Source: Bigelowiella natans CCMP2755 (lineage: Eukaryota; Protista; Cercozoa). From it: DNA of 57,196 nt. This document shows, one piece after another, positions 1-35,138 of the stretch. A program made the translations under genes and the position numbers. Where the stretch lies: positions 1 through 57,196 of the forward strand of contig ADNK01001981.1 in assembly GCA_000320545.1 (NCBI GenBank), read 5' to 3'. How positions within the stretch are numbered: the first letter of the stretch is position 1; each line of letters opens with the position of its first letter. Under the pieces are notes generated by a model. That model saw only the letters and a list, made by a program, of their open reading frames with translations. It did not search any database and was not told the origin of the DNA.

Positions 1-1006
1 CCGGGGCAAGAGAAAAATATCCCCTTTCCCCACCTACTGGCTACCTTTGAGAAAATTTGGACTTTCAGGCGTCTCTATTTTAACTGGATGGGACGGGGAA
101 GAGGCTGTGAGTTTACCGCGCACCCGCCAGAAAAAAAAATTATGTAACATAGAATGGCAGTAACCTTATTTTTCTTTTGAATTTCTGATGCTATTATTTT
201 TGCTTCAAGCAACACGTCAATTTGAGTTTTGGGAGCTGGCGCGCAGAGAGAGAGAGAGAGGGAAAAGAGAGAGAGAGAGAGACCTCCCTAGAGATGAAAG
301 GCGGGGAGGAGGAGGGAAAGGGGTTTTCTCGTAAAAAGCTCACTTTTAAAACTTTCTACATAAATATTGTTGTCGCAACCACCAAAACACCTATATAATG
401 TACATTTACGGGACACACGGAGAAGTTATACTAAATAAATATTCGGCCCGAATCACAAATAACAAAAAGGCCCTCGTAAATGCCACAAATGCATCACAAA
501 AAATGGATGACCTTGTTCCAGACCAACGCAAAAGTTCAAAATCGTTTTGGCCCGCAGCGGGCACACTTGCTGACTTGCCGGCGAACATGCGGTGTGAGCA
601 CCGATTGGTGCACGCGTGGGCCCTGGTGCCTGGTTCCTGCAAAAACTTGCAATTGCACCCAACTCCGATCATGGAAGACCTGGTCCATCTGAACGAGGGG
701 TTGTGTCTTCACGGGGAACATCTCGTGAGAGGCGTGAGTTGCTTTTTGCCACCGGGGACTGCCCGGCTCACAGCAAAATGACATTGAAGAAACAAAAGAG
801 CTTGACAGGCAATGGCAGTTGAGTTTGTCCATTGCACCCCAAGGTTGTTCTGGTTGCTGTTGTCACGTTCCATCAGGTGCATGTGACCGCTGCAAAGTGC
901 TTGGGAAGACTCACTTGCGTCGTGTTGCATGCCGAAACACTGAACAGGAGGACGAGCCCGAATTGCACGTGCGAGCGGACGCATTTGGCCCTGACATGCA
1001 ATTCGA

Positions 1007-2409
1007 TTGCAATTCACAATGTTTCCACAAGAAGATTCAATGTTCACTTTTCTTCACAGGGACGGATGGACGGGAGGGTCTGTCTTCGCTCTGTTCTTGC
1101 CGCATTTCGATCCAGCAGAACAATCTGCGCATTGTCATGCGCATGGCACAATGAACATTGCCAGGGATCTTTTTCAGTGCGTGTGCAATGCTGGTCGTGA
1201 GGTTTTCACTGCGGAGATGCAGGAATTGGAAAGCGAACGGGTTGGGTTTGATGTCAAGGACGCAGACAGAGACATCTTCCCCTGGTCGGTCGATGAAGCC
1301 GACGTCAAATCAACAGAGGAGAACATGACAAAAATCATGGCTGGCACCAAAGAACGTGAATGTGGTGCAGGCCAAAGGAGCCCGTTCTTCGCCAAGGGAA
1401 AAAAGAAACCGACACCATGGCAGGACAGGAAGATGATGTTTTGGACCCTCCCAATGAAGTGCCCGCTGGCCAAATTGATGCTGCACGTGTCACTCCACGC
1501 GGGCGCTCACGAGCGCACCATCACCCCGCTCTTTGAACTGTGCGATGCCCTGGCGCTCATCTGGCACACACCACCACCACCGCGGAACTGGATGAGCTGG
1601 AGGCCAAGTTGGACATTGCAGTGGATGCAATTGAAGAAGTGCCACCGAAGCAGCAATCTGCAATGTGTCCACACTTGATGCGGCATGTGCCGGATCAAAT
1701 CAGACGTGCGGGGCCGCTCCACCAATCATGGACCCACTTTGTGGAACGCTACGTCCGTTTCGTGCGTGGAAGGGCATCTGCACAAAACCGCACGCTGACG
1801 TCAATGAAAAATGCGATTCAAGCTTGGCTTCGAGCGACCCCTCTGTCTGGATCAAATGCACCGAGCCGGCCAGCGCATGGTGAACCCAACGACAGGGTGC
1901 GGGTTCAAGAGAAACGCAAATGGAAGACGCATGTGCCCACCAATGAACACGCAGTGGCGTTTCTGGAGGCAGTGGAACTGTGCGGGTTGGATCACCAAGG
2001 TGGTGTTTTCTGCCGGGGATCCTCGTGCGTGGTCAATGGTGGACCCATGTTCCGAACACGAGGAACAGAATCAACCACATCTTCCAAAAATTCGTGGGTC
2101 ATTTGCCTGTTTGAAGAAAAAGGAAATCCCATTCAGGTGCTCGCTGGTGTGGAGGAAGTGTGGAAATGGCACCCGAGGGGAGAACCGTCTCAAAGCCACT
2201 GTGCATTCAAAGTGAAATGCAAAACAACGACGTTGTTGAGCGTGCACAGGCCTAGCGGGTTCACTCTCTGCTCGGCCAACACCAACTCTGTCAGAGGCTC
2301 GGCACGGGGAGAATTTGTCACCTCAGCTGACACATCATTGGCAAACCCCATGCCAGCACCTCACGTGAACCATGCAGCATGTGGGAGGAGTGCGCAGTGC
2401 TTCGAATGA
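1007..2409 (+). pseudogene. CACTA/EnSpm (CMC)-type DNA transposase remnant, frameshifted and TA-edited
   Basis: ORF 1540-2409 has HLMRHVPDQIRRAGPLHQSWTHFVERYVRFVRG, resembling the CMC/DUF4218 motif HLxxHxxxxIxxxGPxxxxWxYPFERY. The overlapping ORF 1007-1678 lies upstream in another frame. No TIRs identified. Confidence 0.65.
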
Positions 2410-2663
2410 ACATTGCCACATCATTGACCCTGCAGAGGCAATTGCGCAGTGGCATCAATGACAAAGAACAGACTTGCAGTGAACACGTTGCAATTTGCAA
2501 TCACGTTTGCATTTGAACACAGCAAGCACACTGTGCTGTTCTCCTGCACAACCTGTCACATCTGACCTGAGCAAGGTGTGTGCAAGTGACATTGATGCGT
2601 TCACATCGTGTGGAGCGTGACCTCACATTGACATTCATGGCGCTCAGAACAGCCAAACAGGTG

Positions 2664-3035
2664 CATTGGAGGGCTGGGTGCGGTGCGATGTGCGCGCAGT
2701 GAGCAAAAGCTGACAAACGAGCAGGCAGCGGTGTTCAGGTTGAACTGGGATGTCATCATGCGAGGGTGGACCGCCCTCGGACAGATGTTGAGCTTGTCAT
2801 CAGTCACACGCAATTGCATTGGGTTTCTAGGCCACGACAAGGCTGGTCCTTGTCGTGCGACATGCGTGTGCATTCCTTGTCGCGGCAGACTGAAGCGTCA
2901 CGGCAATGCTTGTCGCACCTGTGCCGCTTCACCTGCTGCTACGTGCACAGTCAATTTGCTAATTTCCTCGGTTCATGCTCGCTTGCATGTTGACTACATG
3001 CATGTCAAACTTGCGCGAACATGGGAGCATCAACA
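2664..3035 (-). repeat. 3' LTR of Copia copy 1 (372 bp)
   Basis: (C/T)(A/G)TTGGAGGG...GCATCAACA. Diagnostic variants (gctgacaaac, gggtggaccgccctcggacagat) match the split LTR at 10067-10151 plus 17948-18234. Confidence 0.92.
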
Positions 3036-3047
3036 CGCCTCCCAAAT
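3036..3047 (-). promoter_or_regulatory. Polypurine tract of Copia copy 1 (equivalent at 10524-10535 for copy 2)
   Basis: The minus strand reads TTTGGGAGGCG immediately before the 3' LTR start TGTTGATGC. Confidence 0.65.
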
Positions 3048-5139
3048 TGGCAAATTGACTGACGCGCATGCACGCATGCACGTTTCCACAACGGGCAAAC
3101 CGATGCATCATGCTGCGCATGCGATGCCTCTTCAATCAAGCAGGCCACCACATGCGTTGCCGCCATTGGAAGCTTGCACTCACTCGTGGTCGAGCTACAG
3201 GCTTGAATGCATGCAATGCATGCATGGGTAGGAAGCGCCAATGGCCGCAAAAACCTCCCGTTGCTTTGCACGATGTGCAACAGCTCCGGAATCGAACTCA
3301 CTGCAACGCACGTGCAGTTCGATTCGGTGGCTCAGGGCACGGCCTGCCACGATGATCCTGCACAACCAGTTGCAATGCTTGAGTTGCACGGTGAGTGGCG
3401 ATGCATGCTCGCACCTTCCGCTCGTTCTGCATGCGAACCGAACGGAAGTGCAGCCATCCGCTTCACCGTCAACTGCATCTACATCACTGATGTCAGAATG
3501 CATCACTCGTGGCAGCTGACGCCACAATTGCGAGGAGGAAAGCTCTCACGAAGAGCAGCCATCCGCCTCCCCAATTTGCAAATTTGTTGCCGAATTGATT
3601 TCGGTTGCGAAAAATTCGGAAAATTCGAAATGCGAATTTGCAAAAAACAATCTCCATGCACTAAGCACCATTTCATTTTCTTGAAATGGGGTCAATCCCT
3701 ACGAAAATGCAAAGTGGCTGCAAAAAATGCAGGCGGTCAACACGCCAAGCGAGAAAAATGTCAGGAAAAGATCCACACACTCACAAAAACACGAAGGTGG
3801 AATGAAAGGGAAAGAGGGGGGGAAAGGGAAAGGGGGAAGGGAAGTGAAGGCATGACGACAGGCAACCCCAACCCTCATTTGCAAAATTGGATGCCTTTGC
3901 ATTTTCACTTTGTGAACATCCTTCCTTTTGAAAAGGAAAGGATTTGAACCAATCACTTTGTTCATTTCCGCCATCAGAAGGACTTTCCTTCGGACCAAAG
4001 GTCCGTGAAGGAAATGCGGTGTGAGGAATGTGATTGTTCAATGTTCTTTTTTTTTTTTTTGCATCGGCATCCTTTCTTCATCAAAGACAAGGACACAAAC
4101 TGACTTGATCATTTTTCCTTTGCATGTTCCAGCAAAAGGCGGGTCTCAATTTCGTGAAACCACCCGCCTCGCAAAGCGAAAAATTGTCCGGGAAGAACCG
4201 GAAAGGTAGGAAACCAATGATCGCAGGGTGTAGTTAGCATCAAGCAACTGCAGGTTCCTTTCTCTCCTTGATGCTCAACCGGAAAATTCATGATTCAACA
4301 CCAGTTGCAACAACCGAGTGTTCTGTTGTGTTCACAGGTTCGAACTGAGCCTGAAAACTAATTCTCAACAAGGTGATCCTTGTCACTCGTAGGACACCAT
4401 TGCAGATGGCAATGTTGAGCATGTTGTGCATCGGGGTTGACCCGCACACATTTGTTAGTAGCGGTGTTGCTCAATTTGACACCAGCAACACCCTGCAAAT
4501 TCCACAGATTTCACATGGGCTCACAGTTGCACAATCAACATGCCAACTGTAGCCCTGCAGAATGATGTCCTTTTGATGTGAGCCAGTTTGTTGCTGCATG
4601 TAGCAATGCATTGAAACCAGCCATGTGACTGAACACTTGTTGTGTCAGTGTTAGCTCGGTGTGCAACTGTGATTGCAACACATCAGCTGTGCTGCATGTG
4701 CTGCAATTTCATGGTTCCCATTGAGTGCAGAACATGTGTCAGCGTTGATTGCTGCATGCATTTCAGATGTCAACATGACAGTTGATGCAACTGTGCATGT
4801 TCTGCAGCGACACTCACTGTGGCAAAGTGTTGCAAGTGATGCATCCCACAATTCACAGGTTTGTCTTGGACGCCTCCCCAGCAGCAACAAGTGCTCCCCC
4901 CAGCCGCAGAGGCTAACGCCTCCCGAGCTGGAGAAGCTGGAGGCTCATGGGGGTCAGTGCAACACCCCATGCGGCATGCATGTTGACCATCACACACCGT
5001 GATGGACACCTGTGCATGCAATGTGCATGTGCTACAGGTAGTGGAGGAGAAGCCTGGCGTCACGCATTGAGCGTCGACGCCAGCAACCATGTGGAAGGAC
5101 TGTTCCAGCCCATCGTCACGCATCAAACGTCGACGGAGG

Positions 5140-8100
5140 CTAACGCCATGCCCCACAAAGGCGACATGTGCCGGCTTGACCGGCGTCACAGAGGCACCAT
5201 TTGGTGCGCATGTCAGCGTGGAACTTCTGGCAACATGCCAGTGTCGGTGTTCGGCCGATGGGTTTGGTCAACACATCTGCAGGTTGATCCTTGCCAGATG
5301 CATGACATGGTCGCATGACGTCATCACGTGTGAATTGTCTAACGTCATGGTACGCAACTCTCATTGACTTGGACTTCTTGGCAAAGCCAGGGTTGGTGGC
5401 TGTCCGGATGGCGGGCTGGCAGTCTTCAAACACAGGCATCTTCATTGAGATTTTCTTGTCAGGCTCGAAGCCTAATTCTTCAACTAACTGTGCAGCATGT
5501 ACCACATCACGCCCTAGCTGAGACATGCTCATGTGCTCAGCTTCGGCTGTGTGATCAGCTACCACAGTCTGTCTGTGTGAGCCGTGCAATGCAGGGCCAC
5601 CGCAGAACTGTGAGAAGTGACCTGATCTGCTTTTGCCATCCTTCTCAGTCATGTGGGTGGCATCGGCGCATCCCTCGAAGCCTCGCTCAGGTCGGTTGTG
5701 GCACGTCTTGCAGTGTTCAGCATTTGGTGAACACTTCATGACCCCACACGCCATTTTCAAGTGGCTTTCCCTTGGGTCCTGCGAATGCACTGCCAGTAGC
5801 GACAAGGCCGCGACTGTGTCCGGTCGTGTAGCTGCTGCAACGTGTGAACAGGCACCAATGACTGACCCAAGTGACGTTTGATCTGCTTCAGGTTCACTGC
5901 TACAGTCCCTCCTTGCATCCATCGGGATCGGAGTCCGAGCGCGCTCAGAAGGCAAGATTTCAAATCTTTCACACATCTCCGTGATGCATTTTTCTTGACA
6001 GACAGAGCAACAACCTCTGCTGTCTCTTTCTGTCTGTGAACCTAAGCACTCTTGCACTGGGCCAAGATGGTGCATTTCGCATTCCTTCTTCAAATTTTCA
6101 ACAACGCAGTCTTCATCTTTCTCGTTTTGAAAACACAGAAGGGCATCGTCCACGTAGATGCCCACTGTGACTTTTCCATCTTCTCCTCTGTCCAACACAA
6201 ATGAGCATGGGTCTGTCTCCATTTGTTTGAAACCCATCTTGGTGAGAGACCTCACGAATGTTCGGTTCCATGTGTGTGCTGATTGCTTTGGACCGCAGAT
6301 GGATTTGTTCAACTGACAGGCTGCATTGGCCCTGTCATTCATTGTCTCTTCTTCTTGTTTGCTCCCACAATCTCCTTTTTCCAACCCATCAGGCATCTCA
6401 AGGTAGACATCGGCGTCAATCTGGCCGCAGAGGTGAGCTGCACGTGTGTCCACATTGTGCATCATCAGCTTGCATCTGGAGCACAACGCCAATGGTGTGC
6501 GCAGAGATGCCTGTGAGAGAGTCGGTGCACACGAGCGAAACCATTCAACGCCTCGGCGTTGATCGAATCCTCTTGCCACCATGCGAGACTTGTAGCGAAC
6601 AGACCCGTCAGGGTTTGGTTTCTTTTCAAATGCCCATTTAGCAGAAACTAACTCACCTTTCGGTCGTCTAACTGCATCCCATGTGTGTCTCTTGACTGAC
6701 GATCCAATTTCATCCTTTGTTGATGGTGACCAACACTTCTTCTCAGGTCCAGTGACAGCCTCGCGGAAGGTTTTGGGTGTGTCCAATGTGTCATGTGCAG
6801 ACACATCAACATCCTTCAACACAACCTCCCCGGTGCTTTGATCAAGAGCGGCGAACATGCGTTCCGCCGTTCTCATCTTGTCACGTTCCAATCGTGGATG
6901 TTTGCACTCTTCAGCGAATGAGCTGTTGCCAGCATGGGCAACAGAGGCAATGCACTGCTCTTCATCCTGCATGGCCTGAAAATCCATTGGAGCATGGACG
7001 CCGTGGTTGCGGCCCATCATGGCCGGAGGCACGTTCTCATCAGATCTCTTGGAGACTCCAGTGGGCAGTTGAGGTGCCTCCCTGCGCTCATGCTTTGCTT
7101 TGTCCATCTCAGGCGCAGTTGAAGAACTCATTCCTCCCGTGGACATCGGCAGCTTTGCAGGCAAAGGCAACGTGGTGTCTGCTCTCTCCTCACCATCATC
7201 CTTCTTGGTGGCGATGGTGGCTGATGATGATGATGATGACATCGCATCTGTCTTCTTGGCGAGAGTGCTCAGCGTGTCATGCAATGATTTGATGAAATCC
7301 ATCACATTGGTGATGTTTGCACTGGAAGAAGGTTCTGATTCATCTCTCTTCTCACTCGCAGGAACCTCGCCTTTGTCCATCTCGACATCAGAGTCCTCAG
7401 GATCCCGACATTGAGGCAACTGTTGTCTTGGAGCAGCAGAGCGAAACACACTTTGACACCACTTGTCCACGTTCGCTTTTTCCATGATTTTGCCGGTGTC
7501 GGCACTGACCATGCACGTGCCATGCCTCGCATCACATCCGAGCATGCGTGCATGCTGTCCAGCATCCTCCAACCGTGACCTTTTGCGCAATTGTTTGTCC
7601 ACCGACAGTGCACCGATGCAGCCAAACACCACTGAATTGCTCAGGTCTGGCTTCTTCTTGTGGCAGAGCTCGCAGGGAGTCTTCGTGCCATCGGCAGAGT
7701 GAGGCATTCGATTCACAGTGTGGATCACATGATCCAACGCGTGACACCAACACCGTGACGATGCACCGCATTGCTTCATCATCGTGCGCATTTCAGTCGT
7801 CACCGTTTGTGTCGCTCTGTCAGATGTTCCGTTCTGTTCTGGCGTTCGCGGCGCACCAGGATCAAAGGCAATGCCGTTCTCATCTGGAAATTTCTGCAGC
7901 GAAGTGGCCGCAAATTCGGAGCCATCATCCGAACGGAACTCTGCAATGTGCGACCCGCATGCGTTTTCATGCTTGCGCAATGCACTGCGCGCAAGCGCCG
8001 GTGTTTGCGATTTCTTTTTGGCCTCAGCCGCGGTTGTTCTGCGTGCACCTTCGTGTGCGCACACCACGAAGTGCTCACAACCGCGCACGCCACGCATTGA

Positions 8101-10014
8101 GCTTTCAGCATCCGCGTGCACACGTTCGCTTTGGGCCGAGGTTGCTCCTGGCACACCTCGCCTTGCGCGTTTGGTGTTGGTCACATCACATGCTGCACAA
8201 TTCATCTTTTTCAACTGATCAGGAGTTTTTGATCCCGTTGAACGTTTTGCAACTTGTGATGTTTTGGGTCGATCACAGTGCAGCAGCTTTCTGTGAAGCT
8301 CCACGTTGTCATCCATTTGATTGCAGACCTGATCGACAGCACACTCAGGCACTTCGACACCACACGACACATCAACATCGTGTGACTGCACGTTGGTTGA
8401 CTTTCCATTGTTGAGCACATTGTGATTGTCATCCAACACGGCATGACACAATCGATTTTTCACCTTGAAATGCACAATGGGCTCATTGTTTTTGAATGCC
8501 AGGGTCTGGCCATTCGCGGTTTCCATGCGACAACCGGTTCTGTCAACCTTGGATTGGGACATGCAAGACAAAGAAGAATTGGGTGAGCACAACACTCCAC
8601 TCAGCATTCCCCTTTTCTTTTTGCCCGAGGGGAGCACGAAAGTCATTGGCACTCTCCCCTTGTGTGTTGCAGCATGGGCAACACCCTTCTTGCCAACACT
8701 CACTTTTCTTTTGTTCAAGAGAGGGAGCAGGTGAGAGAAACACTTTTTGTCATTGAAAATGTGCGCAGTTGCACCATCATCAAGTGTCATTGGACTTTCA
8801 GCATCATGTTCCGTGCTCTGCATGTGACAACCTCTCCCGAACAAATCATCTTCGTCCTCTGAGGAGCCGTGTTCCTCACATTTTTTGTTCTTTGTTTCCT
8901 GCTGCACGTGCATCGCCTCCTTCTCACTCTTCTTGTCCTTTTCACATTTTTCCAGGACGGCGTTGTGCTGCTTCTCGGTCAGGTCGTCAATGTGATGGCA
9001 TTCGCGTGCACAGTGTCCTTTCTTGCCACACGAACAACACACCACATCCTTTTTCGCCTTTTTGTGATCACTCTGCTGATCCTTTTTGTGATCATCATTG
9101 CAGGATCGCTTCCTTCCACCACGCCCTCGGCCTCGGCGTCCGCGTCCTCCTCTGCCGCGAGAACCGCGCGACCCTCTGCCTCGTCCGCGCTGGTGACAAT
9201 CATCATCATCATGATGACACTGGTTTCCCTGATGATTCATCATTTCTTGCGCCGGACGCTTTTTGACGTGAATCCTCTTCACTTCTGCCTGCACGTGGTT
9301 CTTCTCCTGTCCGTCTCTGTCAGCAGCCATCCTTTCAGCACTGAGCAGATCTCGTAGCTGTTCCATGGCATCTTTTGGTTTTTTGTTGTTGGCCGTGGCC
9401 AGGCTGTGCACGATGGCCTCATGTTTCTTCTTTGGTTTCAACCCATTTGTGAAACAGGTCATCTGCATCTGCTCGCCAACAGGCCAGTTCGCGTTGGCCA
9501 GCCTTCCGCAGATGGCAACGAATTTGAAATGATGTGCCTCCACGTCGTGATCGAAATTTTCGATGGAGGCTTGTTGCAGGCTGCTGTTCAACTCATGCAT
9601 GGATGCGTTGTCGGTGGGCTTGAACCTCTCCGTTGGACGAGCCCAGGCGACAGCTGCAAGGCCTCCGGAGTCATCGAGTGGGTGTTGGTGGGCGGAGTGC
9701 ACCGTCAGACAAATCGCGGCGCAGGCCCTCACATTGGCCTCATCGTCGGCGCTCGTAGCAGGCACACCTCCGCGCCAGATTTCAGCTTCGGTCTCGCCAA
9801 TCCGGGCCACCTCCCTGCAGTGCTCCGGATTCTCAATCACTTTGACAAGTTTCGCCGGCCTGTTGGCCGTGGTCGATGGTTTCGCCATTTCGAAACAATC
9901 GATCATGTTTTCGGCCGCGAAAACAGCTTTCATCGTGAAGGCGCAATGGTTGAAGTTGCCACCTGACCTGGTCAGGTGAATCTTGGCTTTGCTCAGAAAA
10001 GACAACTGGGACAT
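5140..10014 (-). pseudogene. Copia gag-pol polyprotein, copy 1 (frame open but missense-riddled)
   Basis: Zn knuckle CCSCGKKGHCAREC, protease LDDGATAH, integrase RSDDGSEF...PEQNGTSDR, RT RYKSRMVARGF, KSICGPKQS and GIYVDD, RNase H ADVLTK. Only 4 Tyr in the 1628-aa ORF. The former stop TAG is now TGG at 5197-5199. Confidence 0.93.
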
Positions 10015-10055
10015 GATTTCTCGCAATTCTCGTCAGTGAACTTTTCTCACTTTGA

Positions 10056-10066
10056 GGCTCACAACC
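10056..10066 (-). promoter_or_regulatory. Primer-binding site of Copia copy 1 (copy 2: 17560-17570)
   Basis: The minus strand reads GGTTGTGAGCC directly after the 5' LTR, matching the GGTTATG(A/G)GCC type of Copia PBS with TA>TG. Confidence 0.7.
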
Positions 10067-10523: not shown

Positions 10524-12689
10524 CGCCTCCCAAATTGGCAAATTGACTGACGCGCATGCACGCATGCACGTTTCCACAACGGGCAAACCGATGCATCATG
10601 CTGCGCATGCGATGCCTCTTCAATCAAGCAGGCCACCACATGCGTTGCCGCCATTGGAAGCTTGCACTCACTCGTGGTCGAGCTGCAGGCTTGAATGCAT
10701 GCAATGCATGCATGGGCAGGAAGCGCCAATGGCCGCAAAAACCTCCCGTTGCTTTGCACGATGTGCAACAGCTCCAGAATCGAACTCACTGCAACGCACG
10801 TGCAGTTCGATTCGGTGGCTCAGGGCACGGCCTGCCACGATGATCCTGCACAACCAGTTGCAATGCTTGAGTTGCACGGTGAGTGGCGATGCATGCTCGC
10901 ACCTTCCGCTCGTTCTGCATGCGAACCGAACGGAAGTGCAGCCATCCGCTTCACCGTCAACTGCATCTACATCACTGATGTCAGAATGCATCACTCGTGG
11001 CAGCTGACGCCACAATTGCGAGGAGGAAAGCTCTCACGAAGAGCAGCCATCCGCCTCCCCAATTTGCAAATTTGTCCCCGAATCAATTTCGGTCACGAAA
11101 AATCCGAAAAATTCGAAATGCGAATTTGTGAAAAACAATCTTTGTGCGCTAAGCACCATTTCATTTTCTCAAAATGGGGTCAATCCTTGCGAAAATGCAA
11201 AATGATCGCAAAAATGTGGGCGGTTGATCCGCCTAGCGAGTGGAATGTCAGGAAAATGCCGCACACTCACAAAAACACGAAGGTGGAATGGAAGGGAGAG
11301 AGGGGGGGGGGGGGGGGGGGAAAGGAAAAACTCAAGGTGACCCCTAACCCCCCTTCAACTTGCAAAATTGAGTGGCCTTTGCATTTTTCATTGTGAATGT
11401 CCTTTCTTTTGAAGGAAAGGACTTGAACCAATCACTTTGTCTGATTTCGGGCTGTTCGCTACAATCAGTACGCGAACCAGAAGGATTTTCCTCCGGACCA
11501 AAGGTCCGCAAAGGAAATGCGGTGTGGGGAAGGTAATTGTTCAATGTTCTTTTTGCATTGGTGTCCTTTCTTCATCAAAGACAAGGACACAAACTGACTT
11601 GATCATTTTTCCTTTGCACATTCCAGCAAAAGGCGGGTCTCAATTTCGTGAAACCATCCGCCTCGCAAAGCGAAAAATTGTCCGGGAAGAACCGGAAAGG
11701 TAGGAAACCAATAATCGCAGGGTGTAGTCAGCATCAAGCAACTACAGGTTCCTTTCTCTCCTCAATGCTCAACCGGAAAATTCATAATTCAACACCAGTC
11801 ATAATAACCGAGTGTTCTATTGTGTTTATAGGTTCGAACTGAGCCTGAAAACTAATTCTCAACAAGGTGATCCTTGTCACTCGTAGGACACCATTGCAGA
11901 TAGCAATGTTGAGTACATTGTACATCGGGGTTAACCCGCATATGTTCATTAGTAGCGGTGTTGCTTAATTTAATACCAGCAACACCCTACAAATTCTATA
12001 GATTTTACATAGGCTCACAGTTGCATGATTAACATGCCAACTGTAGCCCCATAGAATAATGTTCTTTTGACATAAGCCAGCTCATTGCTGCATATAGTAA
12101 TACATTGAAACCAGCTATATAACTGAACACTTATTGTGTCAGTATTAGCTCGGTATGTAACTATGATTACAACATATCAGCTATGCTGCATATACTATAA
12201 TTTATAGTTCCTATTAAGTATAGAACATATATCAGCGTTGATTGCTGCATATATTTCAGATGTTAATGTGACAGTTAATACAACTGTATGTATTCTATAG
12301 CGATACTTACTGTAGTAAAGTATTACAAGTAATGTATCCTATAATTTATAGATTTGTCTTGGACGCCTCCCCAGCAGCAACAAGTGCTCCCCCCAGCCGC
12401 AGAGGCTAACGCCTCCCGAGCTGGAGAAGTTGGAGGCTTGTAGGGGTTAGTATAACACCCCATACGGTATGTATTTAAACCATCACACACCGTGATAGAC
12501 ACCTATACATATAATATATATGTGCTATAGGTAGTGGAGGAGAAGCCTGGCGTCACGTATTAAGCGTCGACGCCAGCAACCATGTAGAAGGACTATTCCA
12601 GCCTATCGTCACGTATTAAACGTCGACGGAGGCTGACGCCATGCCCCTTAAAGGCGACATGCGCCGGCTTAACCGGCGTTGTAGAGGTA

Positions 12690-15600
12690 CTATTTAGTAC
12701 GTATATCAGCGTAGAACTTCTGGCAACATGCCAGTGTCGGTGTTCGGCCTGTAGGTTTAGTCAACATATCTGCAGGTTGTTCCTTGCCAGATGCATGATA
12801 TAGTCGTATAACGTCATCACGTATGAGTTGTCTAACGTTGTGATGTGCAACTCTTATTGACTTAGACTTCTTGGCAAAGCCAGGGTTGGTGGCTATCCGG
12901 ATGGCAGGCTGGCAGTCTTCAAATGCAGGCATTTTCATCAATATTTTCTTGTTAGGCTCGAAGCCTAATTCTTTAACTAACTGTGTAGCATGTACTACAT
13001 CACGCCCTAGCTGAGACATGCTCATGTACTCAGCTTCGGCCATGTGATTAGCTACCACAGTCTGTCTGTGTGAGCCGCATGATGCAGGGCCACCGCAGAA
13101 CTGCAAGAGGTAACCTGATCTGCTTTTGCCATCCTTCTCAGTCATGTGAGTGGCATCGGCGTGTCCCTCGAAGCCTCGCTCAGGTCGGTTGTGGCATGTT
13201 TTGTAGTGTTTAGTGTTTAGCAAATACTTCATGACCCTACACGCCATTTTCAAGTGGCTTTCCCTTGGGTCCTGCGAATGCACTGCCAGTAGCGATGAGG
13301 CCGCGACCATGTTCGGTCGTGTAGCTGCTGCAACGTGCAAACAGGCACCAATGACTGACCCAAATGATGTTTGATCTGCTTTGGGTTCACTGCTACAGTC
13401 CTTCCTTGCATCCATCGGGATCGGAGTCCGGGCGCGCTTGGAAGGTGAGATTTCAAATCTTTCACACATCTCAGCCATGCACTTTTCTTGACAGACAGAG
13501 CAACAACCTCTGCTGTCTCTTTCCATCTGTGAACCTGAGCACTCTTGCACTGGGCCAAGATGGTGCATTTCGCATTCCTTCTTTGAATTTTCAACAACGC
13601 AGTCTTCATCTTTCTCGTTTTGAAAACACAGAAGGGCATCGTCTGCGCAGATGCCCACTGTGACTTTTCTGTCTTCTCCTCTGTCCAACACAAATGAGCA
13701 TGGGTCTGTTTCCATTTGTTTGAAACCCATCTTGGCGAGAGACCTCACGAATGTTCGGTTCCACGTGTGTGCTGATTGCTTTGGACCGTGGACAGATTTG
13801 TTCAACTGACAGGCTGCATTGGCCCTGTCATTCATGATCTCTTCTTCTTGTTCACTCCCACAATCTCCTTTTTCCAACCCATCAGGTGTCTCAAGGTGGA
13901 CATTGGCGTCAATCTGACCGCAGAGGTGAGCTGTGCGTGTGTCCACATTGTGCATTGTTGGCTTGTGTCTGGAGCACAACGCCAATGGCACACGCAGAGA
14001 TGCCTGTGAGAGAGTCGGTGCATGCGAGCGAAACCATTCAACGCCTCGGCGTTGATCGAATCCTCTTGCCACCATGCGAGACTTGTAGCGAATGGACCCG
14101 TCAGGGTTCAGTTTCTTTTCAAGTGCCCATTTGGCAGAAACTGACTCACCTTTCGGTCGTCCAACCACATCCCATGTGTGTCTCTTGACTGACGATCCAA
14201 TTTCATCCTTTGTTGATGGCAACCAACACTTCTTCTCAGGTCCAGTGACAGCCTCGCGGAAGGTTTCAGGTGTGTCCAACGTGTCATGTGCAGACACATC
14301 AACATCCTTCAACACAACCTCCCCGGTGCTTTGATCAAGAGCGGCGAACATGCGTTCCGCCGTTCTCATCTTGTCACATTCCAATCGTGGATGTTTGCAC
14401 TCTTCAGCGAATGAGCTGTTGCCAGCATGGGCAACAGAGGTGATGCACTGCTCTTCATCCTGCATGGCCTGAAAATCCATCAGAGCATGGACGCCGTGCC
14501 AGCGCAGTTGCGGCCCATCATGGCCGGAGGCACGTTCTTGTCAGATCTCTTGGAGACTCCAGTGGGTGGTTGTGGTGCCTCCTTGCGCTTGTGCTTTGCT
14601 TTGTCCATCTCAGGCGCAGTTGAAGAACTCATTCCTCCCGTGGACATCGGCAGCTTTGCAGGCAAAGGCAACGCAGTGTCTGCTCTCTCCTCACCATCAT
14701 CCTTCTCAGCAGCGATGGCAGCTGATGATGATGATGATGACATCGCATCCGTCTTCTCAGCGAGAGCACTCAGCGCACTGTGCAATGATTCAATGAAATC
14801 CATTGCACCAGCATCATTCGTGCTGTGAGAAGAAGATTCTGATTCATCTCTCTTCTTGCTCGCAGAAACCTCGCCTTTGTCCATCTCGACGTCAGAGTCC
14901 TCAGGATCCCGATGTTGAGGTGACTGTCGTCTCAGAGCAGCAGAGCGAAACACACTTTGATGCCACTCATCCACATTCGCTTTTTCCATGATTTCACCGG
15001 CATCGGTGCTGACCATGCACGTGCCATGTCTCGTGTCACATCCGAGCATGCGTGCATGCTGTCCAGCATCCTCCAACCGTGACCTTTTGCGCAATTGTTT
15101 GTCCACCGATGGCACACCGACACAGCCAAACACCACCAAATTGCTCAGGTCTGGCTTCTTCTTGTGGCAGAGCTCGCAGGGAGTCTTCGTGCCATCGGCA
15201 GAGTGAGGCATTCGATTCACAGTGTGGATCACATGATCCAACGCGTGACACCAACACCGTGACGATGCACCGCATTGCTTCATCATCGTGCGCATTTCAG
15301 TCGTCACCGTTTGTGTCGCTCTCTCAGATGTTCCGTTCTGTTCTGGCGTTCGCGGCGCACCAGGATCAAAGGCAACACCGTTCTTGTCCAGAAATTTCTG
15401 CAGCGAAGTAGCCGCAAATTCGGAGCCATCATCCGAACGGAATTCTGCAATGTGCGACCCGCATGCGTTTTTGTGCTTGCGCAATGCACTGCGCGCAAGC
15501 GCCGGTGTTTGCGATTTCTTTTTGGCCTCAGCCGCGGTTGTCCTGCGTGCACCTTCGTGTGCGCACACCACGAAGCACTTGCAACCGCGCACGCCACGCA

Positions 15601-17518
15601 TTGAGCTTTTGGTGTCCGCGTGCACACGTTCGCTTTGGGCCGAGGTTGCTCCTGGCACACCTCGCCTTGCGCGGTCAGTGTTGGTCACATCACATGCTGC
15701 ACAATTTGTCTTTTTCAACTGATTGGGAGTTTTCAATCCAGTTGAACACTTTGCAACTTGTGACATTTTGGGTCGATCACAGTGCAGCAGCTTTCTGTGA
15801 AGCTCCACGGTGTCATCCATTTGATCATGGACCTGATCGACAGTGCACTCAGGTGCTTCGACACCACACGATGCATCAATGTCACATGACTGCACGTTGG
15901 TTGATTTTCCATTGTTGAGCACATCATGATCATCATCCAATGCGGCATGATGTGATCGATTTTTCATCTTGAAATGCACAATGGGCTCATTGTTTTTGAA
16001 CACCAGGGTCTGGCCATTCGCGGTTTCTGTGCGACAACCGGTTCCATCAATCTTGGATTGGGACATGCAAGACAAAGAAGAATTGGGTGAGCACAACACT
16101 CCACTCAGCATTCCCCTTTTCTTTTCACCCGAGGGGAGCACAAAAGTCATTGGTGCTCTCCCCTTGTGTGTTGCAGTGTGGGCAACACCCTTCTTGCCAA
16201 CACTCACTTTTCTTTTGTTCAAGAGAGGGAGCAGGTGAGAGAAACATTTTTCATCATTGAAAATGTGCGCAGTTGCACCATCATCAAGTGTTGTTGGATT
16301 TTTGGTGTCACGTTCCGTGCTCTGCGTGCAACAACCTCTCCCGAACAAATCATCTTCGTCCTCTGAGGAGCCGTGTTCCTCACATTTTTCATTCTTTGTT
16401 TCCTGCTGCACGCACATCGCCTCCTTTTCACTCTTCTTGTCCTTTTTGCATTTTTCCAGGACGGCGTTGTGCTGCTTCTCGGTCAGGTCGTCAATGTGAT
16501 GGCATTCGCGTGCACAGTGTCCTTTCTTGCCACACGAATGACACACCACATCCTTTTTCGCCTTTTTGTGATCATTCTGCTGATCCTTTTTGTGATCATC
16601 ATTGTGGGATCGCTTCCTTCCACCACGCCCTCGGCCTCGGCGTCCGCGTCCTCCTCCACCGCGAGAACCGCGCGACCCTCTGCCTCGTCCGCACTGGTGA
16701 CAATCATCATCATCATGATGACACTGGTTTCCCTGACAATTCATCATTTCTTGCGCCGGACGCTTTCTGACGTGAATCCTCTTCACTTCTGCCTGCACGT
16801 GGTTCTTCTCCTGTCCGTCTCTGTTGGCAGCCATCCTTTTGGCACTGAGCAGATCTCGTAGCTGTTCCATGGCATCTTTCAGTTTTTCATTGTTGGCCGT
16901 GGCCAGGCCATGCACGATGGCCTCATGTTTCTTCTTTGGTTTTGACCCATTTGTGAAACAGGTCATCTGCACCTGCTCGCTGACAGGCTGGTTCGCGTTG
17001 GCCAGCCTTCCGCAGATGGCAACGAATTTGGAACAACATGCCTCCACGTCGTGATCGAAATTTTCGATGGAGGCTTGTTGTGGGCTGCTGTTCAACTCAT
17101 GCATGGATGCGTTGTCGGTGGGCTTGAACCTCTCCGTTGGACGAGCCCAGGCGACAGCTGCAAGGCCTCCGGAGTCATCGAGCAGGTGTTGGTGGGCGGA
17201 GTGTGCAGTCAGACAAATCGCGGCGCAGGCCCTCACATTGGCCTCATCGTCGGCGCTCGTAGCAGGTGCACCTCCGCGCCAGATTTCAGCTTCGGTCTCG
17301 CTAATCCGGGCCACCTCCCTGCAGTGCTCCGGATTCTCAATCACGTTGATGAGTTTCGCCGGCCTGTCAGCCGTGGTCGATGGTTTCGCCATTTCGAAAC
17401 AATCGATCACGTTTTCGGCCGCGAAAACAGCTTTCATCGTGAAGGCGCAATGGTTGAAGTTGCTGCCTGACCCAGTCAGGTGAATCTTGGCTTTGCTCAG
17501 AAAAGACAACTGGGACAT
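12690..17518 (-). pseudogene. Copia gag-pol polyprotein, copy 2 (frameshift near 14490)
   Basis: ORFs 14480-17623 and 12690-14480 align with copy 1, with an 8-nt length difference near 14500. RT YVDD is degraded to CADD. The C-terminal part keeps Tyr (MKYLL, SRSGY, AEAEY) and the TAG stop. Confidence 0.92.
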
Positions 17519-17570
17519 GATTGCTCGTGATTCTCGTTGGCAAACTTTTCTCACTTTGAGGCTCACAACC

Positions 17571-17942
17571 CATTGGAGGGCTGGGTGCGGTGCGATGTGC
17601 GCGCAGTGAGCAAAAGCTAGCAAACGAGCAGGTGGCGGTGTTCAGATTGAACTGGGAGGTCATCATGCGAGGGTTGACCGCCCTCTCACAAGTGTCAAGC
17701 TTGTCATCAGTCACACGTGATTGCATTGGGTTTCCAGGCCGCGACAAGGCTGGTCCTTGTCGTGCGACGTGCGTGTGCATTCCTTGTCGCGGCAGGCTGA
17801 AGCGTCACGGCAATGCTTGTCGCACCTGTGCCGCTTCACCTGCTGCTGCGTGCACAGTCAATTTGCTGATTTCCTCGGTTCATGCTCGCTTGCATGTTGA
17901 CCACATGCATGTCAAACTTGCGCGAACATGGGAGCATCAACA
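17571..17942 (-). repeat. 5' LTR of Copia copy 2
   Basis: 372-bp match to 10152-10523, adjacent to the PBS. Confidence 0.92.
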
Positions 17943-17947
17943 ACTGG

Positions 17948-18234
17948 GATGTCATCATGCGAGGGTGGACCGCCCTCGGACAGATGTCAAGCTTGTCATC
18001 AGTCACACGTGATTGCATTGGGTTTCCAGGCCACGACAAGGCCAGTCCTTGTCGTGCGACATGCGTGTGCATTCCTTGTCGCGGCAGACTGAAGCGTCAC
18101 GGCAATGCTTGTCGCACCTGTGCCGCTTCACCTGCTGCTGCGTGCACAGTTGATTTGCTGATTTCCTCGGTTCATGCTCGCTTGCACGTTGACCACATGC
18201 ATGTCAAACTTGCGCGAACATGGGAGCATCAACA
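17948..18234 (-). repeat. Part 2 of the split 5' LTR of Copia copy 1
   Basis: Continues the LTR exactly where 10067-10151 stops, ends in CAACA, and is followed by the TSD AGGTG. Confidence 0.9.
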
Positions 18235-18904
18235 AGGTGTCATGCTGGCTAGGCAACCATTTGCTTGTGTTGTGAAAACATTGCAAACCTGCAACATCAA
18301 AACCATGTGCATTGCACACATTGTGCAATGCACCATGCACATTGCACATGTTGTCAAAAGCTCAGTGGACCGCAGTGCAGTGCATGCTTGCACCAGCAGC
18401 AGCAACGCCAGAGCAATCTGCGTGCGTTCATTGGCTGCGACAAGCAACACGCACACAGTTGAGAATGCAGCCGAAGTGCAATGTGCGACTTCGATGAACT
18501 GCCGCGACAATGCGTGCAGTGGCTGCTGACCAATGAGAGCTGACCTCTCATGAGTCAATGGGCTGTTTCGCCCCCATCAATGTTTGGCGCTGCCGGCGCA
18601 CGTGGTGATTCAGGCAATTTCGCCTTGATGAATGTTGACATTGTGCAGCATGCATGAAACGTCATGTCGTCATCAACACAGATCTGAGACAGCTGCTTGC
18701 CCAGCTGTTCTCCCCTGCCTTCCTGCCTCCACCTGACCATGCCAGTCGCCTGCACTCCGCACCGCCTTCAACTCAAACTTCCAACACCTGTCGATTTCTT
18801 TGTCAGTCGAAGGGACACCAGATGTGGCCCCCAAAGCAAGGCAGAACTTGTCATGGGAAGACATGGCTGAGAAAGCACGCAACGTGACCACGTCATCATT
18901 GGCA

Positions 18905-19130
18905 TCAGGTTGATGACGAGACACTAGCTGACGAATCCTGGTCCAAAAACGGTCTCTGATGTCGCACGTTCCGCAATGCCCAGCGCACAGCTTCGTTTTG
19001 AACCCCTTCAAGGAGGCGAAGCGAATGGGCCGGCAATGAATGACTCCACACAGCTGCCGCATGCTCCATCAGCGGCCGCACCATGGCCTTGTGAACGGTG
19101 ACAGCCATGTTGATCAATTTGCCGCACTCG
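18905..19130 (-). pseudogene. Non-LTR retrotransposon (LINE) RT C-terminal fragment, TA-edited
   Basis: VHKAMVRPLMEHAAAVWSH...LLEGVQNEAVR corresponds to the LINE motif LYKxLVRPxLEYAxxVWSP...LExVQxxAxR, with both Tyr replaced by His. Confidence 0.75.
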
Positions 19131-20739
19131 CAAGCAAGACCATTTTTAGCTGTTAGCATGTCGCAGGGGATGAAACACAGTGCATTTATGTCCAAATATT
19201 TGTCCCATCTAATCAATCACCCTCACCGGCCGATCGGTGTGATGGAACCGAACTGCTGACCGACCGACCGACGGATTCATCAAAGCTATCATCAGCTCCA
19301 AATTTCCTCAAACCTCAAGGCTCTGCTGCTTCTAAAAAGAATCGTTTTTTTTTTGTGAATGATACCCTGTTTGCCTCTTTCTCATCATATCCACTCCTCA
19401 CAAACCATAGGAGGAGGACCGCCATCTCATGCATTTGCATCAGGAGGTATATTGGCTGAGTTATCGAGCTTAGCGTTACCGTCCTCTTCGTCACAACAAC
19501 ACCGCCACAATGGCCGTCATTATTATCCAGTGAAAAAATACAACAAGATTCGACTGAAATCTCGGGAAGAGCTATCTGGTATCAATTAGCTTTGTGATGC
19601 CTTACCTGAAGGATATAAATGTAAGACTATCCAATACTAACGTATTTGTGTGTGTCTTTTAAGGATTTCTAGCCAAGCTGGACGCCAACTCAATTACTGT
19701 GCTTATGGAAGATATACGGTAAGTTCAAAATGATGTCGACATACACACACACACACACACACGCACACACACACATTGTTGTTCATCTTCTATATGATTG
19801 TGCACAGTCAATTGACCAATCTAGTTCATGATGAATAACAACTATTTGAAGGGATGAAGGAGAAGAAGGGGTTCCTTTAAAGCAAAAAATCCCAAAAAAA
19901 ACGGTAAGAAGCTGGGTCAAACCTTTGATGATATATTTATTCATTATATCTACAAGTCAATACAACTGCTTTAAGAGGTAATGATGATGATTGTGCTACT
20001 AATGGCATTTGATGGTAGGGATGCTGGGACTGTGAATGCAAGGCTTCTAATCATCAACATCGCTACACATGCTTCAAATGCGGTCATGTGTATTTTTATC
20101 ATCGCCGTTATGATTGTCGCTAAATCGTTGATTGACCCTTGTTGATCTTTCAATCTAAGGAATGGCACGGCCTAAATTACCCCCATTTTACGACTCAACG
20201 CCTATCGTCGCAGTCATATCCATGCGATACAAAGCTCAAACAATTAACAGAAAGTTTCCTCCTCCCTACGACAAGTACTAATGTTATATGATAAGTCGTG
20301 GTAGTCAAAATTGAAAAATGAGGTATTCATAGGTTTTCGGGTGGAGGCTCCATTGAAGTGGAGAAAATGGTCGCTAATAGTTACTTTATAACTGTATTAC
20401 AAAGTCTTGTTACCCCAGCCAAAACTGAGTGTACTGCTCGTCACAATAGTATCTGTTATAAACCATTCGCTTCAATGAAAACAAAGCAACACCTGCGGCA
20501 TACAAATGCCACAATTTTGCAGAATTTTCAATTTTACTTGCACAATGTGTGAGTAGAATACATCTCAGCATAAAAATTTATCTGTCGTGTTTATCAGGCC
20601 TACGGTGTGACACAGGTGTGTCGCTTTTTATCAGCATCGGAGTCTACCGATGATAGGAGAAATCTTGATAAAAATAGCAGGTAAAGGGCAATTATTGTTT
20701 TTGGCATTCGTAATTGCATGTAGGGAGGGTGTATGGGTG

Positions 20740-35095: not shown

Positions 35096-35138
<43 letters not shown>

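What the first reader, a model, noticed from the sequence alone, without database searches (positions are those of the whole stretch)
480..19140. Repeat-targeted TpA>TpG/CpA hypermutation: a candidate 'reverse-RIP' genome-defence system
Seen: TA is essentially erased from the TE cluster, with none by eye in ~2.7 kb (6671-9354) and about 20 in the 4.9-kb copy-1 ORF, whereas neighbouring host genes have plenty. Direction is fixed by conserved Tyr codons (TAY) that became Cys (TGY) in one Copia copy and His (CAY) in the other: CCSC/CHSC (zinc knuckle), RSCAPT/RSHAPT, KSICGPKQ/KSVHGPKQ (canonical SLYGLKQ) and EGCADA/EGHADA. Leu>Ser/Pro, Ile>Thr/Met and Val>Ala follow the same rule. Established: fungal RIP and 5mC decay are C>T changes (RIP creates TA), and ADAR/APOBEC editing of retroelements is strand-polarised. 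Here the change is A:T>G:C, TA-specific and strand-symmetric. Inference: a chromatin- or homology-guided DNA mutator. Candidates are TA-preferring DNA adenine deamination (TadA/ADAT-like), a modified A or T at TpA, or Pol-eta-like error-prone repair. I know of no described pathway with this signature.
Basis: partly seen in the sequence, partly recalled or inferred. Interest (0 to 1): 0.96.

Follow-up and report, generated by a model that had tools for sequence, protein, structure and literature searches.

The report
TpA-erasing hypermutation of an algal transposon nest
A nest of dead transposons has had nearly every TA dinucleotide turned into TG or CA in the chromosome itself; the pattern is real and striking, but a 2026 preprint on the alga Bigelowiella natans already reports it and points at this very region, with the enzyme still unknown.

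Summary
Window 478-19140 holds 216 TA where 1091 are expected, and 155 of those sit in one 2-kb island. One stretch of 2,686 bp has none. TG and CA are 1.4-2.1 times over-represented.

The domain is a nested transposon. A single Copia insertion, flanked by a 5-bp target duplication (AGGTG), expanded in place to LTR-unit-LTR-unit-LTR. It sits inside a DUF4218-bearing element.

The two units were identical at birth. They now differ at 627 sites, and 473 of these are TA-derived. Adenines preceded by T changed to G about 29 times more often than those preceded by A. The two strands were hit equally and independently, even at sites no more than 30 bp apart. So the change happened in chromosomal DNA, not in RNA.

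The phenomenon is not new. Mettrop et al. (bioRxiv 10.64898/2026.01.13.699255) showed TpA-only A:T>G:C hypermutation of integrated viral DNA in B. natans by mutation accumulation. They list a cluster at 'scaffold_50 1,000-19,000'. The window matches that cluster and one of their mutation records, so it is almost certainly this locus.

'Repeat-targeted' is not supported. 'No described pathway' is out of date, although the enzyme is still unknown.

The parts
478..2663 (+). Left part of the older host transposon into which the Copia inserted; TA-free
   Evidence: 2 TA against 120 expected. ORF 1537-2406 matches Pfam DUF4218 (transposase-associated) at E=1.1e-8, 35.4 bits against a cut-off of 27. 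The last dense TA on the left is at 477.
2659..2663 (.). Left copy of the 5-bp target-site duplication AGGTG
   Evidence: The same pentamer abuts the outer ends of the first and last LTR.
2664..3035 (-). LTR 1 (3' LTR of unit 1), TG...CA-type ends
   Evidence: It is 93-97% identical to the other LTR copies. All copies end in ...CATCAACA.
3036..10066 (-). Internal region of unit 1, with an open gag-pol reading frame at 5140-10026 (open because TAA and TAG no longer exist)
   Evidence: Pfam RVT_2 at E=1.1e-38, plus Pol_BBD and SH3_retrovirus. 20 TA against 270 expected in the ORF. Tyr content 0.2%.
10067..10151 (-). Extra 85-bp copy of the LTR start, next to LTR 2
   Evidence: Repeat family D6, 99% identical to 2664-2748.
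10152..10523 (-). LTR 2, shared by unit 1 (as 5' LTR) and unit 2 (as 3' LTR)
10524..17570 (-). Internal region of unit 2; gag-pol is split into two ORFs (12690-14480 and 14480-17623) by a frameshift
   Evidence: 91% identical to unit 1 over 7.5 kb. Pfam RVT_2, rve, Pol_BBD. Gap columns lie near 14368-14618.
11345..13400 (.). Unmutated island inside unit 2: the end of pol plus the 3' untranslated part, with normal TA content
   Evidence: 155 TA against 160 expected. Tyr is kept in this stretch of the protein. The twin stretch in unit 1 lost 87% of these TA. Non-TA divergence is about 1%, as elsewhere.
17571..18234 (-). LTR 3 (17571-17942) followed by a 293-bp internal duplicate of it (17943-18234)
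18235..18239 (.). Right copy of the target-site duplication AGGTG
18240..19140 (.). Right part of the host transposon; TA-free
   Evidence: 2 TA against 48 expected. TA density resumes at 19147. No Pfam match.
34800..35554 (.). Separate small patch with the same composition and unknown identity
   Evidence: 3 TA against 40 expected; CA+TG make up 22% of dinucleotides. No similarity to anything fetched.

Best explanation
The window is almost certainly Bigelowiella natans (Bigna1) scaffold_50:1-57196. Bases 478-19140 are a dead transposon nest: one Copia insertion that expanded in place into a tandem array, sitting inside a DUF4218-type element.

The nest has been driven nearly to saturation by the TpA-specific A:T>G:C hypermutation that this alga directs at foreign DNA (Mettrop et al. 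2026).

Shown:
- The changes arose in chromosomal DNA after integration.
- They hit an adenine only when a T precedes it.
- A hit destroys the TA, so each TA is hit only once.
- Both strands are hit equally and independently.
- A 3' G lowers the chance modestly.
- The affected domain ends at the element's edges.

Inferred: the chemistry is enzymatic deamination of adenine to hypoxanthine in DNA, read as G at the next replication. A tRNA-A34-deaminase-type enzyme (ADAT2/TadA fold) would explain the need for a 5' T, because its natural substrate is always U33-A34. The enzyme would reach single bases in duplex DNA rather than running along one exposed strand. It would be directed by a heritable, element-bounded mark rather than by sequence duplication.
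For: Identity of the window:
- The preprint's Fig. S11 legend names a cluster 'scaffold_50 1,000-19,000'. The window's domain is 478-19140.
- The preprint's Table S2 lists scaffold_50:4201 G>A in context GGA. Window 4200-4202 reads GGA.

The change happened in place, in DNA:
- One AGGTG target duplication flanks the whole three-LTR array, so the units were identical at birth.
- They now differ at 627 sites. 590 are transitions, 473 are TA-derived, and 164 dinucleotides read TG in one unit and CA in the other.
- The flanking element, which is not part of the Copia, is equally TA-free.

Specificity:
- With the island as the ancestral state, A>G occurred at 43% of adenines after T. That destroyed 87% of TA dinucleotides. 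The rate was 1.5% after A, 4% after G and 10% after C.
- No TA became CG.
- Adenines followed by G were hit at 35% against 47% for the rest (odds ratio 0.60, p=0.0013).

Strand symmetry:
- Unit 1 has 148 TG and 149 CA outcomes in 144 runs, against 149.5 expected (z=-0.64).
- Sites no more than 30 bp apart share the outcome in 114 of 219 cases.

Not an assembly artefact: two Illumina metagenome contigs of a related Copia (L002, L011) differ from each other in the same way, and 65 of 87 both-base dinucleotide differences listed are TG against CA.

Live process: the preprint found 230 of 231 new mutations in two viral inserts to be A>G or T>C, nearly all at TpA, at about 1000 times the background rate. 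It proposes an ADAT2-like candidate, Bn78255.
Against: - No enzyme has been shown. The candidate rests on sequence motifs and predicted structure only.
- The window contains no deaminase gene.
- A strand-symmetric, unclustered, palindrome-centred pattern is also what decay of a symmetric base modification would give.
- The unmutated island inside one unit is not explained by any simple targeting rule.
- No TpA mutation on scaffold_50 appears in the preprint's mutation list, so there is no direct proof that this locus is still being mutated.
- The identity of the window rests on two coordinate matches, not on a sequence alignment.
Confidence: 0.62

Rival explanations
1. Decay of a modified base. 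TpA in marked foreign DNA carries a symmetric modification, such as 5-hydroxymethyluracil, a J-like base on T, or a modified adenine. That base mispairs or deaminates, much as methylated CpG decays to TG/CA.
For: - The target is a palindromic dinucleotide.
- The two strands are hit equally and independently, one site at a time. Methyl-CpG decay behaves the same way.
- In dinoflagellates 5hmU replaces T preferentially in TA and TC and is enriched on repeats (PMC11572971).
Against: - No such modification has been reported in B. natans in the papers found here.
- T followed by C (an adenine after 5' G on the other strand) is barely affected: 4% against 43%.
- By my arithmetic from the preprint's numbers, the live rate is about 1e-5 per TA per generation. 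It switches between 0 and 45 hits per line. That looks more like a regulated enzyme than spontaneous decay.
Confidence: 0.2
2. Targeting by duplication, as in fungal RIP. Repeated DNA is recognised by homology and both copies are mutated.
For: - The affected DNA is transposon DNA.
- The two tandem units each gained many independent hits after they duplicated: 164 dinucleotides read TG in one unit and CA in the other.
Against: - About half of the former TA sites carry the same state in both units (72 same, 23 different), so loss began before this duplication. The element may already have been multi-copy elsewhere in the genome, which the window cannot show.
- One unit keeps a 2-kb unmutated island although its twin is mutated.
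- The preprint confirms by read depth and blastn that its hypermutable giant-virus region is single-copy.
Confidence: 0.1
3. Error-prone patch repair by a Pol-eta-like polymerase that inserts G opposite T at WA motifs.
For: From general knowledge, Pol eta produces A>G changes at WA motifs during somatic hypermutation.
Against: WA includes AA, but adenines after A changed at 1.5% against 43% after T. No transversions or clustered patches accompany the changes: 590 of 627 differences are transitions and outcomes are unclustered.
Confidence: 0.04
4. RNA editing of transposon transcripts (ADAR- or ADAT-type), fixed in the genome by reverse transcription.
For: From general knowledge, ADARs and the fungal TAD2/3 editor prefer a 5' U, and the main element is a retrotransposon.
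Against: - The two units come from one integration (one target duplication) and diverged in place.
- Within each unit, sense-strand and antisense-strand changes are equal (148 against 149).
- The flanking element, which is not part of the Copia and carries a transposase-associated DUF4218 domain, is just as depleted.
- New mutations appear in integrated double-stranded DNA virus sequence.
Confidence: 0.02
5. Artefact or selection: base-calling or polishing error, GC-biased gene conversion, or codon or dinucleotide selection.
For: The GC content of the domain is raised, 52% against 41% in the flank.
Against: - The same ancestral site reads TG in one unit and CA in the other, which a systematic miscall would not produce.
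- Independent Illumina metagenome assemblies show the same pattern.
- Gene conversion would not spare AA, AT and TT.
- The coding sequence is wrecked, with Tyr at 0-0.2%.
Confidence: 0.01

Closest known systems
TpA hypermutation of integrated viral DNA in Bigelowiella natans (Mettrop et al., bioRxiv 10.64898/2026.01.13.699255, April 2026)
   Same: It is almost certainly the same organism. It shows the same signature: A>G and T>C only, at TpA, giving TpG and CpA, confined to foreign DNA. The region itself is named in their Fig. S11 legend. Reverse-transcriptase and DDE-endonuclease Pfams are enriched among their TpA-poor coding sequences.
   Different: - They measured new mutations in a giant-virus insert and a virophage insert that still hold many TA. 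Here the target is a transposon nest at the end state (0-4% of expected TA in the parts run to completion, up to about 25% in unit 1's 3' part).
- They did not dissect this cluster; of the 25 predicted genes in their three named clusters, neither of the two with an IPR hit is on scaffold_50.
- The following are not in the preprint: the single-insertion proof of in-place change, the unmutated island, the tests of strand independence, the 3' G effect, and the metagenome relatives.
Repeat-induced point mutation (RIP) of fungi
   Same: It is a DNA-level process that produces only transitions, depends on dinucleotide context, and inactivates mobile DNA. It leaves compositional domains with sharp edges.
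   Different: RIP is C>T, mainly at CpA, so it creates TpA and lowers GC. The process here is A>G at TpA, so it removes TpA and raises GC. RIP needs duplication and a sexual cycle; here a single-copy region mutates in vegetative lines.
AID/APOBEC3 hypermutation of retroelements and viruses
   Same: A host deaminase mutates foreign nucleic acid as a defence, with a dinucleotide context rule.
   Different: AID/APOBEC deaminates cytosine on single-stranded DNA, which gives strand-polarised, clustered changes. Here the target is adenine and the changes are strand-symmetric and unclustered.
tRNA adenosine-34 deaminases (TadA, ADAT2/3), their DNA-active relatives (amphioxus BjADAT2, engineered TadA base editors) and ADARs
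   Same: They deaminate adenine to a base read as G, and they prefer a 5' U or T. U33-A34 is the invariant natural context (general knowledge). The preprint cites DNA activity for BjADAT2.
   Different: Their natural substrates are RNA. No natural enzyme of this group is known to mutate chromosomal DNA domain-wide. From general knowledge ADARs favour a 3' G, whereas here a 3' G is disfavoured.
Methyl-CpG decay
   Same: A palindromic dinucleotide is lost to TG and CA on both strands, one site at a time, in silenced mobile DNA.
   Different: The target there is CpG, through 5-methylcytosine. Here CpG is not depleted: observed/expected is 0.7-1.0 in the domain.
5-hydroxymethyluracil on repeats in dinoflagellates (PMC11572971)
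   Same: It is a thymine modification enriched on transposons, with a reported preference for TA and TC dinucleotides.
   Different: It is described as a silencing mark, with no mutational outcome reported. It occurs in a different lineage. TC is not affected here.

Membership tests
B. natans TpA hypermutation (Mettrop et al. 2026) | Changes are almost exclusively A:T>G:C transitions | tested here: met
   590 of 627 differences between the units are transitions. In the island comparison there are 158 A>G or T>C changes against 37 C>T or G>A.
B. natans TpA hypermutation (Mettrop et al. 2026) | Changes are restricted to TpA, giving TpG or CpA depending on the strand | tested here: met
   473 of 627 differences are TA-derived. 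The A>G rate after a 5' T is 43%, against 1.5-10% after other bases.
B. natans TpA hypermutation (Mettrop et al. 2026) | Confined to DNA of foreign or mobile origin, with normal composition next door | tested here: met
   The domain equals the Copia array plus its DUF4218 host element. TA content is normal on both sides.
B. natans TpA hypermutation (Mettrop et al. 2026) | The sequence is from the B. natans nuclear genome | tested here: met
   Two coordinate matches support this: the cluster 'scaffold_50 1,000-19,000' and the mutation record scaffold_50:4201 G in context GGA.
B. natans TpA hypermutation (Mettrop et al. 2026) | The mutation rate is raised now, in mutation-accumulation lines | tested here: inconclusive
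   The only scaffold_50 entry in Table S2 is a G>A outside any TpA. About 5 hits would be expected in the island at the per-TA rate of the giant-virus region (my arithmetic). Whether this locus was callable is unknown.
Fungal RIP | C:G>T:A transitions at CpA that create TpA | tested here: not met
   The direction and the context are the opposite.
Fungal RIP | Triggered by sequence duplication | tested here: not met
   About half of the TA loss predates this duplication. One duplicate has an unmutated island. A single-copy region mutates in the same organism.
AID/APOBEC-type editing | Cytosine deamination with strand-coordinated clusters | tested here: not met
   Adenine is the target, and runs tests give z=-0.64 and z=-0.98.
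RNA editing fixed by retrotransposition | Changes lie on the sense strand only and are acquired before integration | tested here: not met
   There was a single integration. The two strands are hit equally. The flanking element, which is not part of the Copia, is also affected.
Adenine deaminase of the ADAT2/TadA fold as the mutator | A deaminase-fold protein that deaminates adenine after T in DNA | not testable with these tools
   No such gene lies in the window. The preprint's candidate Bn78255 is untested.
Ty1/Copia LTR retrotransposon | LTRs with TG...CA-type ends, a 5-bp target duplication, and the domain order gag, protease, integrase, RT/RNase H | tested here: met
   LTRs and the AGGTG duplication are shown. 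Pol_BBD, rve, SH3_retrovirus and RVT_2 occur in that order.

The most novel reading that the evidence does not exclude
The TpA mutator is this lineage's general way of killing transposons and is active in wild marine populations. Related Copia copies in seawater-type metagenomes carry the same signature, next to an intact relative.

Its targeting would be a heritable mark with sharp boundaries that can skip 2 kb inside an element. That would make it a natural, guide-directed adenine editor acting base by base on duplex DNA.
Probability: 0.3. Interest if true: 0.85.

Novelty: already known. Interest (0 to 1): 0.45.

Why it matters
A cell that deliberately converts A to G in its own chromosome, only after T and only in foreign DNA, would be the first natural counterpart of engineered adenine base editors. 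It would also be a mirror image of fungal RIP.

That claim now belongs to the 2026 preprint. This locus adds three things:
- A retrotransposon nest shows the end state of the process.
- There is clean internal proof that the changes arise in place in DNA, on both strands independently.
- An unmutated island shows that targeting is not simply 'all repeats' or 'the whole element'.

These points narrow the search for the enzyme and its guide.

Tried and rejected
**Organism from host genes.** This failed.
- Pfam on 150 ORFs of the flank gave only WD40 and weak SNARE and RhoGEF hits.
- A homology search with the 814-aa WD40 ORF found only generic WD40 proteins.
- Exact-product look-ups for that ORF and for the Copia ORF found nothing.
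- Rfam and the tRNA scan found nothing.
- The organism came from the literature instead.

**Literature.** Searches worded around RIP, ADAR and 'A-to-G' found nothing relevant. The phrase 'TpA-depleted' found the preprint. A follow-up search found no second report.

**Dinoflagellate origin with 5hmU.** I considered this and set it aside once the organism was identified. It is kept only as a chemical analogy.

**Foreign origin of the island.** The non-TA divergence there is the same as elsewhere. The high divergence at its left edge is slippage in a purine tract and a poly-T tract. This neither supports nor excludes gene conversion.

**More relatives.**
- The JGI metagenome scan returned only two loci, one of them already held.
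- The representative search gave no other Tyr-poor Copia.

**Patch 34800-35554.** It has no similarity to any DNA or protein fetched.

Full report
**1.

In 1-kb windows, TA observed/expected is 0.00-0.25 from about 500 to 11000 and from 13000 to 18700. TG and CA stand at 1.4-2.1. The rest of the window shows 0.6-1.2 for TA.

Exact counts:
- 216 TA against 1091 expected in 478-19140.
- 61 against 933 once the island 11345-13400 is removed.
- 20 against 270 in the copy-1 ORF.
- 0 against 149 in the 2,686 bp between 6669 and 9355.

The left edge is abrupt. There are 30 TA in bases 1-477, then none for 1,273 bp. On the right, TA resumes at 19147.

**2. Anatomy**

A self-comparison shows that 2656-10151 and 10146-17655 are 91% identical over 7.5 kb, followed by a third LTR.

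The LTRs are 2664-3035, 10152-10523 and 17571-17942. The last carries a 293-bp internal duplicate reaching 18234. An extra 85-bp copy of the LTR start lies at 10067-10151.

The pentamer AGGTG sits directly outside the first LTR (2659-2663) and directly outside the last (18235-18239). The whole LTR-unit-LTR-unit-LTR array therefore descends from one integration. Unequal LTR exchange is the usual route to such arrays (inference), and the two units were identical when the array formed.

The coding strand is minus. Pfam finds Pol_BBD, rve, SH3_retrovirus and RVT_2 in Copia order. Unit 2 is split by a frameshift near 14480, and its two pieces were searched separately.

The DNA interrupted by the insertion (478-2663 and 18240-19140) is itself mobile DNA. 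One ORF matches the transposase-associated domain DUF4218 above Pfam's cut-off. This DNA is as TA-free as the Copia.

The TA-poor domain is therefore exactly a nested pair of elements.

**3. Direction and specificity**

Unit 2 contains an island, 11345-13400, with normal TA content: 155 against 160 expected. Its twin in unit 1 is depleted.

Taking the island as the ancestral state gives these A>G rates on either strand:

| Base 5' of the adenine | Adenines changed to G |
|---|---|
| T | 43% (87% of TA dinucleotides destroyed) |
| A | 1.5% |
| G | 4% |
| C | 10% |

The 10% after C is probably CpG decay in the other unit, read backwards.

Across the whole unit pair, 590 of 627 differences are transitions. 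473 are TA-derived, 28 are CpG-derived, and the remaining background is about 1%. 164 dinucleotides read TG in one unit and CA in the other. No TA became CG, so a TA is hit once and is then no longer a target.

An independent reference agrees. The closest intact relative is P0001, on metagenome contig L001. That contig has TA observed/expected of 1.09 and the protein has 5.3% Tyr. At P0001's 51 aligned Tyr positions, unit 1 has 23 Cys, 18 His and 4 Tyr. Phe is kept at 21 of 22 positions and Trp at 7 of 7.

None of 148 other Copia relatives falls below 2.09% Tyr. The window copies have 0-0.2% (1.2% in the ORF piece that overlaps the island).

The 3' neighbour matters little, except that an adenine followed by G is hit less often: 35% against 47%, odds ratio 0.60, p=0.0013.

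**4. Strands and clustering**

At sites known to descend from TA, unit 1 has 148 TG and 149 CA outcomes in 144 runs, against 149.5 expected (z=-0.64). Unit 2 has 95 and 81 (z=-0.98). Neighbouring sites no more than 30 bp apart share the outcome in 114 of 219 and 52 of 96 cases. The island-only test gives z=0.08.

The two strands are therefore hit equally and independently. This does not fit an enzyme that runs along one exposed strand, as APOBEC does on single-stranded DNA and as R-loop or transcription-bubble models would require. It also does not fit RNA editing followed by reverse transcription.

**5. Timing**

153 in-codon TA dinucleotides of L001 align to both units. Of these, 72 carry the same derived state in both units, 23 carry different states, 16 are TA in one unit, and 4 are TA in both.

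If TG and CA are equally likely, roughly half of the loss predates the duplication. The shared share falls from the 5' to the 3' part of pol: 27 same to 5 different at the start, 13 to 9 at the end. One caveat applies. L001 belongs to a different family (about 68% nucleotide identity), so some 'shared' states may be native TG or CA.

The process was therefore running before this duplication and continued after it.

**6. Not an artefact, and not only this genome**

Two SPAdes Illumina metagenome contigs carry a related Copia: L002 (ERZ1740072) and L011 (ERZ1740067). Their TA observed/expected is 0.2-0.5 and P0002 has 0.6% Tyr.

They differ from each other mainly by TA against TG or CA. 65 of the 87 both-base dinucleotide differences listed are TG against CA.

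A systematic miscall could not give TG in one copy and CA in the other at the same site.

**7. It is already described**

A full-text search for 'TpA-depleted' found Mettrop et al., bioRxiv 10.64898/2026.01.13.699255, dated 14 April 2026.

Main findings of the preprint:
- The experiment covered 3,132 generations of mutation accumulation in Bigelowiella natans.
- 231 of 302 new nuclear point mutations fell in one integrated giant-virus region and one virophage region.
- 230 of those 231 were A>G or T>C, nearly all at TpA.
- The rate there was about 1000 times the background.
- The mutations appeared in only some of the lines.
- The giant-virus region is single-copy.
- Genome-wide there are 124 clusters of TpA-poor, CpA+TpG-rich 1-kb windows.
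- Reverse-transcriptase and DDE-endonuclease domains are enriched among TpA-poor coding sequences.
- The authors propose an ADAT2-like adenine deaminase, Bn78255, as the candidate.

The legend of their Fig. S11 singles out 'scaffold_50 1,000-19,000'. Their Table S2 lists scaffold_50:4201 G>A in context GGA, and window 4200-4202 is GGA. Their low-TpA gene lists include the first gene models of scaffold 50.

I conclude that the window is scaffold_50:1-57196 of that genome. This conclusion rests on coordinates, not on an alignment. A further search found no second report of the phenomenon.

**8. What the window adds**

- This cluster is a transposon nest. The preprint says the genes in these clusters have almost no annotation.
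- The single target duplication proves that the changes arose in place, in DNA.
- Section 4 adds the strand-independence result and section 3 the 3' G effect.
- The end state is close to zero TA.
- The island is new.

My arithmetic from the preprint's numbers (211 mutations, 6,169 TA, 3,132 generations) gives about 1.1e-5 per TA per generation. That is a half-life of about 64,000 generations.

The 1% background divergence between the units, at 3.5e-10 per site per generation, implies about 1.6e7 generations. A continuously targeted TA could not survive that long. The 61 survivors outside the island, and the island itself, mean that targeting is episodic or bounded.

At the giant-virus rate, about 5 hits would be expected in the island during the experiment. 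None is listed, but whether this locus was callable is unknown.

**9. Mechanism**

The leading explanation is enzymatic deamination of adenine after T in chromosomal DNA. The U33-A34 context of tRNA adenosine deaminases gives a natural reason for the 5' T rule (general knowledge).

Decay of a symmetric modification at TpA remains a serious rival, because the pattern is palindromic, symmetric and unclustered. The dinoflagellate 5hmU precedent is relevant here.

Pol-eta-type repair, RNA editing with reverse transcription, gene conversion and artefact are each contradicted by the tests above.

Duplication as the trigger is not supported.

**10. Housekeeping**

Flank ORFs were searched one by one, by reference.
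- The tallies from the preprint's Table S2 given under 'noticed in passing' were made by hand.

Noticed in passing
window 11345-13400: A 2-kb island of normal TA content lies inside unit 2, with TA-free DNA on both sides. Its in-place twin in unit 1 lost 87% of the same TA. Non-TA divergence is no higher than elsewhere.
   Followed up: partly
window 34800-35554: A second, small TA-free patch (3 TA against 40 expected, CA+TG at 22% of dinucleotides) contains (TG)n and (CG)n runs. It sits just right of a block of GCTAGC-like repeats at 34700-34800. It has no similarity to any DNA or protein fetched.
   Followed up: partly
window 10067-10151 and 17943-18234: There are two small tandem duplications inside the LTRs: an 85-bp copy of the LTR start beside LTR 2, and a 293-bp copy of the LTR body after LTR 3.
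   Followed up: partly
L001 (ERZ27264819); L002 (ERZ1740072); L011 (ERZ1740067): Metagenome contigs carry the closest relatives of this Copia. L001 is intact (TA observed/expected 1.09, Tyr 5.3%). L002 and L011 are partly TpA-depleted and differ from each other by TG-against-CA changes. Their source organisms are unknown. L002 is also arranged as element end, LTR, element start.
   Followed up: partly
window 478-19140 (unit alignment): An adenine followed by G is hit less often than other adenines after T (35% against 47%, p=0.0013). The preferred motif is therefore T-A-H. ADARs show the opposite 3' preference (general knowledge).
   Followed up: yes
preprint Table S2, scaffold_10 (not in the window): This is a hand tally of the 211 new mutations. 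T>C outnumbers A>G, 119 to 91. Context CTA has 17 and its strand mirror TAG only 3. Four T>C changes are not at TpA (ATG three times, ATT once). In lines 3 and 19 the strand outcomes show no significant runs (z about -1.2 each).
   Followed up: partly
window 50660-53104 (-) and other flank ORFs: The host flank is rich in homopolymer-coding runs (Ser, Thr, Gly, His, Gln, Tyr) and microsatellites. The only long ORF (814 aa, weak WD40 match) has no close relative in the protein collection.
   Followed up: partly
window 4201: The one new mutation the preprint records on this scaffold (G>A, line 19) falls inside unit 1 of the Copia array and is not at a TpA.
   Followed up: no
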